The position numbers and the translations under genes were made by a program. Source: Saccostrea echinata (taxonomy: Eukaryota). From it: a stretch of 64,000 nt of DNA. The stretch spans positions 744,001-808,000 of the forward strand of contig NW_026889783.1 in assembly GCF_033153115.1 (NCBI RefSeq). The letters run 5' to 3'. Within the stretch, counting starts at the first letter, position 1; every line of letters starts with the position of its first letter. Below the pieces are notes generated by a model. The model was not told the DNA's origin. It made no database searches and was given only the letters and a program-made list of their open reading frames with translations. Shown here piece after piece: positions 1-8,400 of this stretch.

Positions 1-4
1 GTTA

Positions 5-82
5 CAGGCCTGTAGCAACGTTTTCAAAGTGAAAGGGGGGGGGGGGGCTCCGAAAAAAAATCCCGCGTACTATATGGGCCTG
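5..82. mobile_element. Short CAGGCC...GGCCTG MITE remnant
   Basis: Terminal inverted repeat; left end is the reverse complement of 2980-2998. Confidence 0.5.
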
Positions 83-1811: not shown

Positions 1812-2048
1812 CTCATATTGCTATCCTCGCTCGAATCCTTTTCTTGGTCCTTCTTTTCAAGGTTATTCAGAGATTTCGAGGGCCCTAAGTAAAAATAAAC
1901 CATGTAAACATGAGCTTCAAAACTTCTCCTTCAAAATGACACGCACAGCAGACGCGTACCTTCTAATACTAATGAGATATAGCAAAAAAAAGTTACCTCT
2001 GCGGGTGCTTGCGACGAGTTTGCTTGGACCTCTCTGTAATGCATACAT
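1812..2048 (-). CDS. MCRIP2: MCRIP2/FAM195-family protein (MAPK-regulated corepressor-interacting protein), first two coding exons; gene continues left of the window or in exons not recognised
   Basis: Exon 1 2048-1997 reads MYALQRGPSKLVASTRR-G and ends at GTAACT. Exon 2 1884-1812 follows a TTAG acceptor, reads GPSKSLNNLEKKDQEKDSSEDSNM and ends at a phase-2 GTTTGC donor. The N-terminus matches the MCRIP2 signature MYxxxxGPSKLVAxxRxGP. Not in the ORF track. Confidence 0.85.
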
Positions 2049-2283
2049 CTCATAACGTTTGCTCTATTCTGCGCAAAACATTGCGCACAAGGTCAAATAG
2101 AAGGAAGGACTGTTTTGTAAAGGTAGGTCATGTTGATCAGAAAGTTAAATTCGGGAAAAGCCATAGTTATAAACATATTTAACTTATACAATGATATCAG
2201 ATGTATCAGAAGAAGTGAAAACGATAAAGATAAAACTGGAAAATAAACAATAAATATTTAATTTTCATAACATCGGAATCAAG

Positions 2284-2354
2284 GCGCCGCTGGTGTAGTG
2301 GTATCATGCAAGATTCCCATTCTTGCGACCCGGGTTCGATTCCCGGGCGGCGCA
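2284..2354 (+). tRNA. tRNA-Gly(CCC)
   Basis: GCGCCGC/GCGGCGC acceptor stem, A-box TGGTGTAGTGG, anticodon arm GCAAG-ATTCCCATT-CTTGC with CCC anticodon, B-box GGTTCGATTCC, discriminator A; 71 nt, no intron. Confidence 0.98.
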
Positions 2355-2357
2355 GAC

Positions 2358-2365
2358 TTTTTTTT
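2358..2365 (+). terminator. RNA polymerase III terminator (T8)
   Basis: Run of eight T three nt after the tRNA 3' end. Confidence 0.85.
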
Positions 2366-2611
2366 GTTCTGGTTAATACAATGTTATTGCATACAAAAAC
2401 ACTGAGAATGATAAGTGCATTCCTTCTATGATCATCATTCGATATAAGTGTAACGTGGGTCTTTTCATGGTACCTTACCCTGCTTGTATTTTTTGACAAT
2501 GTAAATCTGTGGCACAAACAGAACTTGAACCAATAAACTATATAAAGTGTTAGAACTACAGTACCTTGCAACCACACAGGAGTATCCATCACACTCAAAC
2601 CTCATTATCTC

Positions 2612-2998
2612 ATAGAACGCGGGGGTGGGGGGGGTGGGGGGGGGGTTGGAGGGGCCCCGCCTCCACCACTTTTTTCTGAGTATAGCATTTTGCTATAGTA
2701 AATTTTCCCTCATATGCTGGTTGCCCCCCCCCCCACTTTTTAATGTTGTAAGGTCCAGCACTGGCAAATTCCATGATTTGGACAATAAATGACCTTTTTT
2801 ATTTGCTTGTCAGATAATTTTGGGAAGTTGCCCCCTTTTGGTCAGTTTAATTTTTTTTGTTTTGCTTCTCAGATTTTTCTGGGAAGTTGCCCCCCCCCCC
2901 CCCCCCCCCACTTTTGGTCAGGTTATTTTGTTTTGCTTCTCAGATTTTTCTGGGAAGTTGCCCCCCCCCCCCCCTTTTGAAACCGTTGCTACAGGCCT
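2612..2998. mobile_element. G/C-run-rich MITE (left end truncated) with about 65-bp internal duplications
   Basis: Ends GCTACAGGCCTG like the elements at 5-82 and 44066-44380; repeated CAGATTTTTCTGGGAAGTTGCCCC units. Confidence 0.55.
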
Positions 2999-3232
2999 GT
3001 TATATATTGATGGGATTAAGAAAAAACTTGGAAATTAATATCCAAGTATTGGATGAGTTTAAAATACAGATTAAAGAAAAAGTAATTGGGACTTTCAACT
3101 GGCTTTGAGATATCCATGATAACGAAGTTGAACTGTAATTAATAATTATACATAAATAATTCCACAGTGTCTCGGTATATCTATATACAATTCCTGAATG
3201 ATTGAATTGTGTTTATTGACAGATTTTGATGC

Positions 3233-5034
3233 ATGAGTTGTTTGCTCATCAGATTTCTTACCTGCACTATCCAGAGGAAACAATCATACTTGTATGCAAG
3301 ATATTTTTCAACATCACACTCAGACAACATGTTACAGTTCCCAGCAGCAGAAAGAAATAAAGAGCACATGTTGAATGTTCTGAAGGACCATTTGCCAGCT
3401 AATAAAGAGGGGCAGGCCCTGGAGATTGCCTCAGGTTGTGGGGCTCATGTTGCCCTGTTTGCACAAAATTTTCCTCTAATAAAATGGCAACCCAGTGAGA
3501 TTGATCAAAGATGTTTAGAAAGGTAATTCAATTAATATATAATATTAAAGGACTGATTAAAATTATACATGTACATATTCACATTCATATATTACACATA
3601 TGAATTATTTGACTTGGTTTTTTTGAGCAGAAATTATATATTTATTTGTAGAATTCATGAATTTTATTACATTTGTATTAATTGTTGGAATGTAGAAGGA
3701 TGTATATATTTTTCATCCTATACATGAATACAGAACCATGTTTTGCATTATGCGTAATCTTCTAGTATTTCAGCATATAAGGAACATTATGGCCTACAGA
3801 ACATAAATGAACCTATACCAATAGATGTAACCTCTCCTGTTCAGTCCTGGAATGAGGGAAAATTCCAGGCTGCTTCATTTGATGCTGTGGTCAATATGAA
3901 CATGATTCACATTTCACCCTGGGATACAGCAATAGTAAGCTTTGGAGAACATTCAACTAGGTTATGGTGAAATAATATTTTTAATTTATTTATCATTTGA
4001 TCATTATAAGAAACAATTACACATCCTTTTTGTAGGGATTATTTAAAGGCTGTGGAAGCCTCCTGAAGAGTGGAGGTTTGCTATTTTTATATGGGGTAAG
4101 TAAATTAATGACAGTTTTCTGCTGCTGGGAACTGAATCATGTTGTCTGACTGTGGGAAAATGTAACGTGCAGTTTTCATAGCAATATTTTGTTGGGGTTC
4201 ACATCAAAGCACGGTTGAGGAAAAAATAATTCCAGGTTTTCCCCTCTCAATGCAATTTATATATATTTTAAAATCAAATAAAACATTTACACTCCACAAA
4301 TGGAGAATGGGTAGAAATATGCATTCTATTAACTGTTCTGCAAATGAACTGTTTCAGTCTCCTATCTGGTCTGCCAGTACTTCCTTGAAGGGATTTCTTA
4401 AGCTCTTATTCTGATCAGAAAAGCTATCCTTATGTTCTTATTTACCTAAATGCATTTACATGTACAAATGTAAATGTCTTTTCAGCCATTTGCAGTTCAT
4501 GGTAAACTGATTCCAGAGAGCAATGTTTCATTTGATGCTTCCCTCAGACAAAGGTAAAGCTGATGTCTACCCTGTAACCTTGTAAAGGGACAAGTACATT
4601 TGAGCATTATTATTATACTTTGCTTATCAAGGTCTTCATCTTTTCCTGTACATGTACCTTGTACATCTTTCAACATGTATATATATATACATTAAAATAT
4701 CAATATATGTATTAAATGCGAATCAAGTACAGTATCTTCTGTACCTTGTAGTTCTTTGGACATGTCAAGTATATTTATTACAGGGACAGTAGCTGGGGTG
4801 TCAGAGATGTTGATGATGTAGAAAAGCTTGCAATTCAGAATGGAATGGCTCTCATGAAAACAGTAAGTTAGTTAAAGATGCCTGTATTAACCATACATTA
4901 CTACAATTTATTCCATATAATTACTAGTAAATACAGTGGTTTGTCAAATTTCTTAGTACTAAACATGTGCATTGTTTAATTTGTAGGTTGATATGCCAGC
5001 AAATAATAAAACCTTGATCTTCAAGAAATCCTAG
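3233..5034 (+). CDS. METTL26: Methyltransferase-like 26 (UPF0585/DUF938 family), 6 coding exons
   Basis: Exons 3233-3522, 3766-3934, 4036-4095, 4486-4553, 4784-4862, 4987-5034; all GT-AG and phase-compatible. Motifs AAERNK, LEIASGCG, WQPSE, NMIHISPW, LYGPF, SNVSFDASLR, WGVRD, DMPANN. Conserved core starts at the second ATG (3329). Confidence 0.96.
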
Positions 5035-5469: not shown

Positions 5470-8400
5470 TCAATCGAATGAAATCAGTTCTCCCTCCAGT
5501 TGTGTGGGGGCTGGGGGAGGTTGTTGGGGAGGAGGCCCCTGGGGAGGGGGTCCTCCCTGTTGATACTGCTGACTTTGAGGAGGGGGAGGGCCTGTCATAT
5601 ATTGCTGTTGTTGACCTGAGGGGGTTGAATACACACCTTGCTGATTCTGCGGGGGCAAAGCATTGGACATATCTGTCAACAAAACATTACAACAATAAAA
5701 TATGAAATAAATTTTTAACTGATATTTTCAAAACAAGTACTCATTTAAGTAAAAAAAATTCTACACTTAAAACATAAAAATTCACTTGCTTTGCATATTG
5801 AATGCCTTGTAATCCATATTAGGAGGTGGCATGTACCCCTGGTTCATGGGAGGTGACATGCTATATTGCATCTGTGGTTGGTAACTGTTTTGCCCCTGTT
5901 CAGAATGGTATGTCCCAGGCAAATTAACAGGTTGTGTGGATCCTGGTGGAAACTGCCCTCCTGCTTGTGAACTAGGAACAGTATACATCTGCCGCTGAGG
6001 TGTCTGCTGCATCTGTGGCTGTCCTGCCCCAATAGGGCCCTGATTTATCATGTTCTGTTGATCAATGCTCCCTCCAGAGGGCCCCATTCCCACATTCATT
6101 CCGCCCTGCATTTGTGGTATGCCCTGCCCTGGTCCCATGTTCATATTACCTGGACCCACACCCATTGGAGGATAAGCATTCTGATGCATCTGATGGACTG
6201 GAGAACCATCCACAGAATTGATTGGACTAAAGGTTTGTCCGGGTATGCCCTGCATTGGTGGCATCTGCCCATAAGCCTAAGTGTTCAAAATTAAATTCAT
6301 GTACAAGTGCATATATGTATAACCTATCACAGTGTAAGACAGCGAATGTAATAGAGATTGTATTATGTATATATTGACTCACGTTCGGAGGGTATCCATA
6401 TGCCTGCATCTGCCTCATCTGAGTTAACTGCTTCTGTTGTTCAAATCGCATTTGCATTTCTCTCTCTTGTTCTTGCAATCGTTGCAAAGCCAACTGTCTC
6501 TGCATTTCTAAGTATTCCTGAAATTTAAAAAAAAATTAAAAGAAAATTGATTTTATGATGTTCGGTGATCAGTAAACAATGTTTATGGCTATTTTTTTTC
6601 ATTTGTTTTCATTTGACATGCTATTGTGAAGAATGTCCCAAAAGAATTCTCTGAAAAGTGTGTGGTCAGGATACTGTAGACATACTTTTCTTCCTGTGGA
6701 ATTTGTAACAATGTACTTAAAAGTTTCTTAAAGACATACAAAGGCAATCCAAAAGATTTGGGTACAAGTAATTTTCTACATGTGGATTGAACAGAAGCTG
6801 TGATCCCTTGGAATTCTTAGCTAATAAAAAAAAATATGTTTACAGTAATTTAAAATGTGTCTTTTGATTCATTTAATCAAAGCATATGGTTTTGTTGACC
6901 AATTTTGATTGAGAGTTGAAGCAAGTGGTCTTTGAGGAAATACTTAAAATTATTTATGAGCAATCTGCAAATTGCATTAAGGTGTGCAAATTACCGAATA
7001 CAGAGTATCCAAAGTATACAGATTTGATTAAATTGAGACTTATTAAAAATTAGCATGGGACTTAATTTTGAGATGAATTTGGACAAATTACGCTTCTGTG
7101 TGGACTTACATGCTTCTTCTGCCTCATGATCTCTAACTTCTGAGCCATCTGTATCTGCCTCTGTCTCTCCAGTTCCTCCTGTTCTCGTCGCTTCTTCTCT
7201 CGATAATCCTCACGTAGAGCATCCAGAGCCTCGCGGGCATCTCGGAGCTGGGCAAGCTTGTCTTGTAAGGACTCGTAATGTCCTGTCAACGAAAATCAAA
7301 TTGTATTATAATTCAGAGTACAATACATGTATACGTAAGATAACACAAACACATATATGTACATGTTCCAGTGTTTTTTTTTTTTACTTCTATACAAACA
7401 TTATTCCAAAAATATCATGAGCAAACAAAATATTGTAAAATAGGACTGGCTGTAAAGTTAGATTTTGCTTTGATGTTGCTGGGGTGTATTTGCCTGAAGA
7501 ATCACAGTTTTTTTAAGTCACGCCCACCTTTTGGCATCAAGCCATACTGTGACAAGACCTTGACTGATGAATGAATGATGTTAATTTCCAGACCTTGGCA
7601 ATGGCTGATGAATGAATTAAGTCAGCATTTTCAATTCAAGAATACTAACATTAGCTTGTCGATGTTTGCTTCATAAATGTTTCTTTATGTTTTCTCCGCG
7701 TATCCTTAATCAGTAAATGATACGTCCTATCTCGAATTCTCGTCATTCTCTTTCCCATCTCTAAATACATATAGCAATTTCACATCAGAAGTCCCTGCAT
7801 TTTTTTTACTTCCAATACCATTTCAAACTTTCATTAAAATGTCAGAAATCAATTCATTTTTTTCTGTATACGCCGATTGCCATAAAGAAAATTTTCAGTG
7901 GCGATGTTTCCCATACCCATCCACCCTTTTTTCATTAAAAAAAAAAAAAAAATCAATATAGAAAGATAAATTTTCTTTCAGAGTTGACGGCCTGAATATA
8001 AAAGCCAACAATCGCTACCCTGTACCTGACAAAAATCATGTTTTATGTGTCTTCAACATTCCAAAGGTACAATATCTTCACACATACCAATTCCGAATTT
8101 TTTATCAACGATTTGCAGCAGCAGTGCCACAGATCCTTGCAGATGGAGACCGCTATTTATACAGACTCCGGACCGTGACTTGACACCTTGTAGTAGGCGG
8201 CGCTAATTATCAACTTGCTTTTTTCTCATTGGTCCTCTGGTACAAGTAACTTACAAAATAGATATTAATTGGTTAGTGGTAAATACACTCACAGTTTTTA
8301 TTCACTCGGGGCTCCGCCCCTCGTGAATGAAAAACTGTGAGTGTATTTACCGCTAACCAATTAATATCTATAGTGTAACTATAACTTATTTGGCCAGGAC

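What the first reader, a model, noticed from the sequence alone, without database searches (positions are those of the whole stretch)
1812..5034. MCRIP <- tRNA-Gly(CCC) -> METTL26 cassette apparently conserved between a bivalve and human
Seen in sequence: a MCRIP2/FAM195-like gene starts 235 bp left of an intact tRNA-Gly(CCC) and points away from it. METTL26 starts about 880 bp to the right on the same strand as the tRNA. Recalled knowledge: human 16p13.3 has METTL26 (C16orf13), a tRNA-Gly-CCC-2 gene a few hundred bp upstream on the same strand, then divergent MCRIP2 (FAM195A). Individual tRNA loci normally turn over quickly, so one retained between the same two genes since the protostome-deuterostome split would be exceptional. 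Inference: the Pol III unit (TFIIIC/TFIIIB-bound) may be a functional part of the shared Pol II promoter, acting as activator, insulator or interference switch. Alternatively the poorly characterised methyltransferase METTL26 may be co-regulated with, or act on, this tRNA.
Basis: partly seen in the sequence, partly recalled or inferred. Interest (0 to 1): 0.92.

Follow-up and report, generated by a model that had tools for sequence, protein, structure and literature searches.

The report
Ancient tRNA-Gly gene between MCRIP, METTL26
In an oyster genome a single-copy glycine tRNA gene sits between the same two protein-coding genes, in the same order and orientation, as in human; termites and another mollusc-like animal also keep the tRNA beside one of them, so this looks like a gene neighbourhood about as old as bilaterian animals, which is unusual for a tRNA gene.

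Summary
The window is from the oyster Saccostrea echinata. It carries an intact tRNA-Gly(CCC) gene (2284-2354, +) that is single copy in the 923-Mb genome. The MCRIP start codon lies 235 bp to its left, pointing away. The METTL26 start codon lies 975 bp to its right on the tRNA's strand, and about 315 bp of that spacer is a dispersed repeat. Both protein genes are single copy.

Coordinates printed in three papers give the human layout: tRNA-Gly(CCC) at chr16(-):686736-686806, 389 bp upstream of the METTL26 first exon on the same strand, and MCRIP2 5 kb on the other side.

New here: among metagenome contigs holding this tRNA, eight termite contigs, one mollusc-like contig and one unassigned contig have MCRIP exon 1 divergent from the tRNA, 260-285 bp away. 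None shows METTL26.

Best reading: an ancestral bilaterian microsyntenic block, kept because a low-copy tRNA gene abuts a compact promoter. A regulatory role for the Pol III unit is plausible but untested. One human knock-down study gives a weak hint. An enzyme-substrate link between METTL26 and the tRNA has no support.

The parts
1812..1884 (-). MCRIP coding exon 2 (..PSKSLNNLEKKDQEKDSSEDSNM..)
   Evidence: 100% identical to residues 18-41 of annotated Saccostrea echinata MCRIP P0350; AG acceptor at 1886-1885, GT donor at 1811-1810 read
1997..2048 (-). MCRIP coding exon 1 (MYALQRGPSKLVASTRRG); ATG at 2048
   Evidence: 100% identical to residues 1-18 of P0350; the same N-terminal exon opens arthropod MCRIP2 proteins
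2049..2283 (.). 235-bp spacer between the MCRIP ATG and the tRNA 5' end. It should hold the MCRIP core promoter and 5'UTR and the TFIIIB site of the tRNA. TGCGCA..TGCGCA at 2069-2088; AT-rich next to the tRNA
   Evidence: sequence; spacers of 260-285 bp in ten metagenome contigs
2284..2354 (+). tRNA-Gly(CCC) gene, intact cloverleaf, single copy in the genome
   Evidence: ARAGORN; Rfam 61.6 bits; one match in 923 Mb
2359..2366 (+). run of eight T, Pol III terminator
   Evidence: sequence; role inferred from established Pol III termination
2611..2925 (.). dispersed repeat with poly-C tracts inserted between tRNA and METTL26; an inverted partner lies at window 4-59
   Evidence: at least 2520 candidate copies in G000, 40 scored at 74-87% identity; repeats and inverted pair
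3329..3522 (+). METTL26 coding exon 1 (ATG at 3329)
   Evidence: Pfam DUF938 61.3 bits, profile 5-62; 58% identical to Mytilus METTL26
3766..3934 (+). METTL26 coding exon 2
   Evidence: Pfam DUF938 47 bits, profile 65-117; tblastn
4036..4095 (+). METTL26 coding exon 3
   Evidence: DUF938 profile 120-139, 14 bits, below cut-off alone; aligns to Branchiostoma METTL26 residues 120-139
4486..4553 (+). METTL26 coding exon 4
   Evidence: DUF938 profile 140-162, 22 bits, below cut-off alone; tblastn
4784..4862 (+). METTL26 coding exon 5
   Evidence: DUF938 profile 163-187, 20 bits, below cut-off alone; tblastn
4987..5034 (+). METTL26 coding exon 6 with stop codon (VDMPANNKTLIFKKS*)
   Evidence: tblastn to Mytilus and Branchiostoma METTL26 C-termini

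Best explanation
This is an ancestral bilaterian microsyntenic block, not a chance or convergent arrangement.

Anatomy. An ordinary, functional, low-copy tRNA-Gly(CCC) gene lies head to head with the single MCRIP gene. It has internal Pol III control elements and a T-run terminator. In protostomes only about 235-285 bp separate the tRNA's 5' end from the MCRIP start codon. METTL26 follows downstream of the tRNA on the tRNA's strand.

Most likely mechanism of retention (inferred). The TFIIIB site, about 50 bp upstream of the tRNA, and the MCRIP core promoter with its short 5'UTR abut each other. That leaves almost no neutral DNA in which a rearrangement or transposon insertion could be tolerated. 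Because the tRNA is the only gene of its sequence type in the oyster (two in human), it cannot be lost and replaced by a copy elsewhere. The linkage is therefore frozen.

Likely but unproven. The two promoters share one nucleosome-depleted region, so Pol III factors and the Pol II promoters influence each other.

Lineage differences. In the vertebrate lineage the MCRIP2 side widened to 5 kb and the tRNA stayed 389 bp from METTL26. In termites METTL26 is not within 2-2.8 kb.
For: Oyster anatomy. Single copy of tRNA, MCRIP and METTL26.

Human order and orientation come from printed coordinates. The printed 5' 19 nt of the human chr16 tRNA equal the start of the oyster tRNA.

Ten of 104 metagenome contigs with at least 350 bp upstream of this tRNA carry MCRIP exon 1 divergently, with the ATG 261-286 bp from the tRNA start (spacers of 260-285 bp). 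Eight of them are termites: their FAM195 exon is up to 90% identical to cockroach and termite MCRIP2, and the exon-1 peptide equals the annotated insect N-terminus. One, L020, has mollusc-like MCRIP exons.

L020 and L087 share NRF1-like and ETS-like motifs within about 45 bp of the MCRIP ATG, which points to very short 5'UTRs.

The transposon insertion lies on the METTL26 side, not in the MCRIP spacer.

General background: Pol II activity next to tRNA genes can promote or interfere with Pol III, and TFIIIB sits about 50 bp upstream (PMC11346459).
Against: METTL26 was not found beside the tRNA in any of the 120 metagenome contigs. The three-gene cassette therefore rests on two species.

Most solitary tRNA contigs (46 of 56, at least 28 sequence clusters) show no MCRIP. 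These include a second termite locus, so the tRNA type also sits elsewhere.

The strand of human MCRIP2 is from memory.
Confidence: 0.6

Rival explanations
1. Active selection for a regulatory role. The TFIIIC/TFIIIB-bound tRNA gene is itself a working part of the Pol II promoters, as insulator between MCRIP and METTL26, as organiser of the nucleosome-free region, or as an interference switch. On this view that function, not mere crowding, is why the linkage survived.
For: Spacing of 235-285 bp to the MCRIP ATG is kept across an oyster, a mollusc-like contig, an unassigned contig and termites. Human C16ORF13/METTL26 is listed among genes adjacent to ZSCAN5B peaks overlying tDNAs and is up-regulated after ZSCAN5B knock-down. 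The other human copy of this tRNA type lies at chr2:70476123, and TIA1 is listed in that paper as tRNA-linked and responds too; which tDNA lies beside TIA1 is not printed there (PMC5340127). [quoted passage not shown]
Against: No direct test exists. Human MCRIP2 moved 5 kb away without losing the gene. Termite contigs lack METTL26 nearby. Conserved spacing is also expected from two abutting promoters with no functional cross-talk. ZSCAN5B knock-down effects may be indirect.
Confidence: 0.3
2. Convergence. tRNA genes, or copies of them, land preferentially in open promoter chromatin, and independently reached the same promoter region in molluscs, insects and vertebrates.
For: [quoted passage not shown] The same tRNA type occurs in other contexts: dense arrays, tandem copies and a second termite locus.
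Against: The same isoacceptor, sequence type and orientation occur next to the same orthologous genes in three phyla. The gene is single copy in the oyster. Even if insertion were limited to roughly 3e4 promoters, three coincident hits would have odds below 1e-8 (my estimate). No retrocopy hallmarks are visible around the oyster tRNA.
Confidence: 0.05
3. Enzyme-substrate or co-regulation link. METTL26, a methyltransferase of unknown substrate, modifies tRNA-Gly(CCC) or is co-expressed with it, and this keeps the genes together.
For: Only the adjacency itself in oyster and human.
Against: Eukaryotic genes are not usually kept together by enzyme-substrate relations. METTL26 is absent from the termite contigs next to the tRNA, and in protostomes the tight partner is MCRIP, not METTL26. 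METTL26 groups weakly with the protein methyltransferases METTL11A/B and METTL9 and its target is unknown (PMC8662637). No solved structure of a relative was found.
Confidence: 0.03

Closest known systems
Ancient metazoan microsynteny blocks and conserved head-to-head gene pairs (Irimia et al. 2012, PMC3514665)
   Same: Neighbouring non-paralogous genes keep order and orientation from invertebrates to human. Tight divergent pairs with shared promoter regions are a main class.
   Different: By its abstract that survey covers conserved gene order in 17 genomes; I assume from memory that it used protein-coding genes only. Here the central member is a Pol III-transcribed tRNA gene. No paper in the searched library mentions tRNA-Gly-CCC together with METTL26/C16orf13 or MCRIP2/FAM195A. 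That paper's supplementary lists were not available.
'Core' tRNA genes with conserved synteny within Drosophila (Rogers et al. 2010, PMC2997554)
   Same: Solitary tRNA genes outside large clusters are positionally stable and more constrained in sequence.
   Different: That stability was shown over about 60 million years within one genus. Here the same position relative to orthologous genes spans the protostome-deuterostome split.
tRNA genes next to Pol II promoters, tDNA insulators and Pol II-Pol III interplay (review PMC11346459; ZSCAN5B study PMC5340127)
   Same: A tRNA gene lies within a few hundred bp of Pol II start sites. Human C16ORF13 is one of the few Pol II genes reported within 5 kb of a factor-bound tDNA and it responds to perturbation.
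   Different: Those studies describe single species. Neither insulation nor interference has been tested for this locus, and deep conservation of such an arrangement has not been described in the papers I could search.

Membership tests
tRNA (Rfam RF00005), glycine isoacceptor CCC | Cloverleaf that scores above the family threshold, with a CCC anticodon | tested here: met
   61.6 bits against gathering score 29, model positions 1-71; ARAGORN anticodon ccc
tRNA (Rfam RF00005), glycine isoacceptor CCC | Functional Pol III gene: internal A and B boxes, T-run terminator, transcription | tested here: inconclusive
   D- and T-arm consensus positions and a T8 run 4 nt downstream are present.
MCRIP / FAM195 (Pfam PF14799) | FAM195 domain above the curated cut-off | tested here: met
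   P0350, 100% identical to the window exons, scores 95.2 bits against cut-off 25. Genome hits lie only at C34:741462-741596 and 737872-737940
MCRIP / FAM195 (Pfam PF14799) | Orthology to vertebrate MCRIP2 rather than MCRIP1 | not tested
   The single invertebrate gene is presumably a pro-orthologue of both. NCBI names the oyster protein 'MCRIP1-like' and the insect ones 'MCRIP2'. No tree was built
METTL26 / DUF938 (Pfam PF06080) | DUF938 domain covering the protein | tested here: met
   Five exons match consecutive profile segments 5-187 of 202. Exons 1 and 2 score 61 and 47 bits against cut-off 27; the three short exons fall below it alone. Searched exon by exon; the joined model was not searched
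Ancient (bilaterian) microsynteny block | Same neighbours, order and orientation in lineages on both sides of the protostome-deuterostome split | tested here: met
   Oyster against human coordinates printed in papers. The human MCRIP2 strand is from memory
Ancient (bilaterian) microsynteny block | Presence in most intermediate lineages | tested here: inconclusive
   The MCRIP-tRNA pair is also found in termites, a mollusc-like contig and one unassigned contig. METTL26 is not seen there. A systematic survey was impossible
tDNA insulator / Pol III element acting on Pol II promoters | TFIIIC/Pol III occupancy and a measurable effect on neighbouring Pol II genes when the tDNA is removed | not testable with these tools
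   Only an indirect human hint: C16ORF13 rises after ZSCAN5B knock-down

The most novel reading that the evidence does not exclude
The tRNA-Gly(CCC) gene and MCRIP form a divergent Pol III/Pol II promoter unit that has existed since the bilaterian ancestor. In it the TFIIIC/TFIIIB-bound tDNA is the element that organises the nucleosome-free region and insulates MCRIP from METTL26. That would make it the oldest known case of a tRNA gene built into Pol II promoter architecture, and possibly the most deeply conserved nuclear tRNA locus in animals.
Probability: 0.27. Interest if true: 0.85.

Novelty: new variant of a known kind. Interest (0 to 1): 0.68.

Why it matters
Nuclear tRNA genes are regarded as fast-moving, redundant family members, and their positions are rarely compared beyond close relatives. 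Here a tRNA gene appears to have kept the same protein-coding neighbours and orientation in an oyster, in termites (MCRIP side only) and in human.

That would give a natural, phylogenetically replicated system for an open question: whether Pol III genes and adjacent Pol II promoters depend on each other, through a shared nucleosome-free region, insulation or interference. The human locus is easy to edit, the tRNA type has only two copies in human, and the two flanking genes are poorly characterised, so any effect would be informative.

It also shows that low-copy tRNA genes can serve as markers of ancient synteny.

Tried and rejected
- **The look-up of encoding contigs closed.** The planned survey of DNA around named METTL26 orthologues (Mytilus, Tegillarca, Sycon, Branchiostoma, a rodent, gar) could not be run.
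- **No read evidence.** So there is no evidence on expression, start sites or splicing.
- tRNAs in fetched loci were located with ARAGORN only. The window by reference, including that stretch, was used locally once in scan_promoters_terminators (uninformative bacterial-type consensus scan) and once as a BLAST subject inside the sandbox.
- **METTL26 in the metagenome loci.** tblastn with about 160 METTL26 proteins and a DUF938 profile over the six-frame translation found nothing in the 120 loci.
- **MCRIP-anchored scans.** Scans of genome contigs and viral contigs found no relatives. Two earlier tries failed for lack of conserved columns.
- **Other negatives.** PDB sequence search with Mytilus METTL26 found no match. 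Supplementary tables of Irimia et al. 2012 are not held. No paper co-mentions tRNA-Gly-CCC with METTL26 or MCRIP2.
- **Gene adjacency by accession numbers.** Mytilus, Tegillarca, Branchiostoma and Dinothrombium MCRIP did not appear among the 120 listed hits, so this was not testable.
- **Spliced models.** They were never joined. Exons were searched one by one by reference. Full-length MCRIP was taken from the database protein P0350.
- **Human material.** Human and primate METTL26 proteins were left out of the local searches, and no human DNA was fetched.
Full report
**What is in the window**

ARAGORN finds a single tRNA in the 64-kb window, tRNA-Gly(CCC) at 2284-2354 on the plus strand. Rfam's tRNA model matches it end to end at 61.6 bits, against a gathering score of 29. 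A run of eight T begins four bases after its 3' end.

To the left, on the minus strand, an ATG at 2048 opens MYALQRGPSKLVASTRRG (2048-1997), followed by a second coding exon at 1884-1812. Pfam FAM195 matches nowhere else in the 923-Mb genome except two minus-strand exons just left of the window, at C34:741462-741596 and 737872-737940.

A later protein search returned the annotated protein P0350, 'mapk-regulated corepressor-interacting protein 1-like [Saccostrea echinata]'. Its longest contig is 7,031,926 bp, exactly the length of the window's contig. It is 100% identical to the two window exons and to the exon in L002, and it scores 95 bits on FAM195. The window is therefore from the oyster Saccostrea echinata, and the MCRIP model is confirmed.

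To the right, six plus-strand exons (3329-3522, 3766-3934, 4036-4095, 4486-4553, 4784-4862, 4987-5034) encode a 205-residue METTL26. Five of them match consecutive parts of Pfam DUF938, and all six align in order to mussel or amphioxus METTL26. Only exons 1 and 2 pass the curated cut-off on their own. METTL26 is single copy. I searched exons one by one by reference and did not search a joined model.

**Distances and copy number**

- 235 bp separate the MCRIP ATG from the tRNA.
- 975 bp separate the tRNA's 3' end from the METTL26 ATG.
- About 315 bp of that second spacer (2611-2925) belong to a dispersed repeat with at least 2520 candidate copies in the genome. The spacing before that insertion was nearer 650 bp.
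- The tRNA, searched as a 71-nt query and as a 32-nt core with up to three mismatches, occurs once in the genome.

**The human arrangement**

I did not fetch human DNA. Three papers print the coordinates (hg19):

| Feature | Position | Source |
|---|---|---|
| tRNA-Gly(CCC), 'trna34_GlyCCC_16_-' | chr16(-):686736-686806 | PMC9550958, |
| C16orf13/METTL26 first exon | chr16:686094-686347(-) | PMC6609318, |
| FAM195A/MCRIP2 | chr16:691804-698474 | PMC6143958, |

- The tRNA yields a 5' fragment whose 19 printed letters equal the start of the oyster tRNA. A second gene giving the same fragment lies on chr2.
- The human tRNA lies 389 bp upstream of METTL26 on the same strand, and MCRIP2 starts 5.0 kb on the far side. 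That MCRIP2 is on the plus strand, hence divergent, is from my memory.
- Cattle also have METTL26 and MCRIP2 inside one 40-kb segment (PMC7033542).
- Order and orientation are thus the same as in the oyster. What differs is which neighbour is close.

**Other lineages**

- **Dense arrays.** 64 contigs are dense arrays of many different tRNA genes from unknown, mostly marine organisms. They say nothing about this question.
- **Solitary tRNA-Gly(CCC).** 56 contigs carry a solitary tRNA-Gly(CCC) and fall into about 31 flank-similarity clusters.
- **MCRIP present.** Ten contigs in three clusters have an MCRIP exon 1 on the opposite strand, with its ATG 261-286 bp from the tRNA start and spacers of 260-285 bp.
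  - Eight come from termite-gut samples. Their FAM195 exon is up to 90% identical to cockroach and termite MCRIP2. Their exon-1 peptide MYTVSKGPSKIVAKTRRG is the N-terminus of annotated insect MCRIP2 proteins.
  - L020, from a marine metagenome, has the oyster's tRNA form. Its MCRIP exons are closest to the oyster and abalone proteins.
  - L087 is unassigned.
- **METTL26 absent.** No contig holds any METTL26 exon, including termite contigs with 2.1-2.8 kb downstream of the tRNA.
- **tRNA elsewhere.** A second termite tRNA-Gly(CCC) locus with a different acceptor stem lacks MCRIP. The remaining solitary clusters are of unknown origin.
- **Real tRNAs.** Acceptor-stem variants among contigs differ by compensatory changes, as expected for real tRNAs of different lineages.

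**Interpretation**

Convergence is very unlikely. The same tRNA type sits in the same orientation, next to the same orthologous gene or genes, in a mollusc, insects and human. In the oyster it is the only copy.

I conclude that the MCRIP-tRNA head-to-head pair dates at least to the protostome ancestor. Given the human layout, the three-gene order dates to the bilaterian ancestor.

Drosophila data show high tRNA gene turnover overall, but also a stable 'core' of solitary genes (PMC2997554). This locus looks like an extreme member of such a core.

**Why it was kept**

Shown:
- The protostome spacer is short and of constant size.
- In L020 and L087, NRF1-like and ETS-like motifs lie within about 45 bp of the MCRIP ATG. 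This suggests a very short 5'UTR and a Pol II start site roughly 150-240 bp from the tRNA.
- The oyster's transposon insertion lies on the other side of the tRNA.

Established knowledge: TFIIIB occupies about 50 bp upstream of a tRNA gene, tRNA genes are nucleosome-free, and neighbouring Pol II activity can help or hinder Pol III (PMC11346459).

Inferred: the two promoters abut or share one nucleosome-depleted region, so hardly any neutral DNA is left for breakpoints or insertions. Because the tRNA type is single or low copy, it cannot be replaced from elsewhere.

This 'frozen by crowding' explanation needs no regulatory function and is my best reading.

The stronger reading is that the tDNA is a working part of the Pol II promoters. 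It is plausible and has one indirect human hint. C16ORF13 is one of six differentially expressed genes adjacent to ZSCAN5B peaks on tDNAs, and it rises after ZSCAN5B knock-down. TIA1 also responds. From memory it lies beside the other human copy of this tRNA type, at chr2:70476123; the paper lists TIA1 as tRNA-linked without naming the tDNA (PMC5340127).

A METTL26-tRNA enzyme-substrate link has no support.

**Limits**

- Intermediate lineages (annelids, echinoderms, amphioxus, fishes, cnidarians) are unexamined.
- The three-gene cassette rests on two species.

**Novelty and verdict**

In the searchable literature no paper links tRNA-Gly-CCC with METTL26 or MCRIP2. By its abstract, the microsynteny survey I found describes conserved gene order across metazoans without mention of tRNA genes (PMC3514665).

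I rate this a new variant of a known kind: ancient microsynteny and head-to-head promoters, here with a Pol III gene at the centre. The finding is real, moderately surprising and directly testable. Its regulatory meaning remains open.

Noticed in passing
window 3315-3353 and 4116-4154: A 39-nt stretch covering the METTL26 start codon is repeated in inverted orientation (92% complementary) inside intron 3. In the pre-mRNA it could pair across exons 1-3. Meaning unknown.
   Followed up: no
window 2611-2925 (inverted partner at 4-59): Dispersed repeat with long poly-C/poly-G tracts, at least 2520 candidate copies in the genome at 74-87% identity. It inflates the tRNA-METTL26 spacer.
   Followed up: partly
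L011, L022, L098, L109 and about 60 other metagenome loci: Very dense arrays of up to about 47 different tRNA genes in 7-8 kb, 70-100 bp apart. They show a recurring order (..Thr-AGT, Lys-CTT, Gly-CCC, Arg-CCT, Met/Ala..) and eukaryote-type intron-bearing tRNAs. Mostly marine samples; organism unknown.
   Followed up: no
L005, L017, L034, L041, L060: A second termite tRNA-Gly(CCC) locus with a different acceptor stem and no MCRIP nearby, so termites have at least two genes of this isoacceptor.
   Followed up: partly
L016; L021, L023, L029, L036, L038, L085, L113: One sample series (Ga0224510/Ga0224511) holds a contig with four tandem copies of this tRNA and seven contigs with similar flanks. 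This is an organism in which the tRNA is multi-copy.
   Followed up: no
window 18600-19223: ARL16-like start (MCLLLGPTSSGKTLL, 19086+) is head to head with a probable HGS start, about 17 kb from MCRIP. From memory, human HGS/ARL16 lie at 17q25.3 near the paralogue MCRIP1. The oyster may therefore show the pre-duplication layout of the human 16p13.3 and 17q25.3 regions.
   Followed up: partly
human chr2:70476123-70476193(-), from PMC9550958 and PMC5340127: The other human gene of this tRNA type is printed at this chr2 position. PMC5340127 lists TIA1 as adjacent to a ZSCAN5B-bound tDNA; that this is the chr2 tRNA-Gly(CCC) is from my memory of TIA1's position. If so, both human copies sit at Pol II promoters.
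   Followed up: no
window 5782-6264 (-): 160-residue open frame rich in Q, P, M and G (part of a larger minus-strand gene downstream of METTL26) with no Pfam match. It is not a counterpart of the human neighbours WFIKKN1/RAB40C as I recall them.
   Followed up: partly
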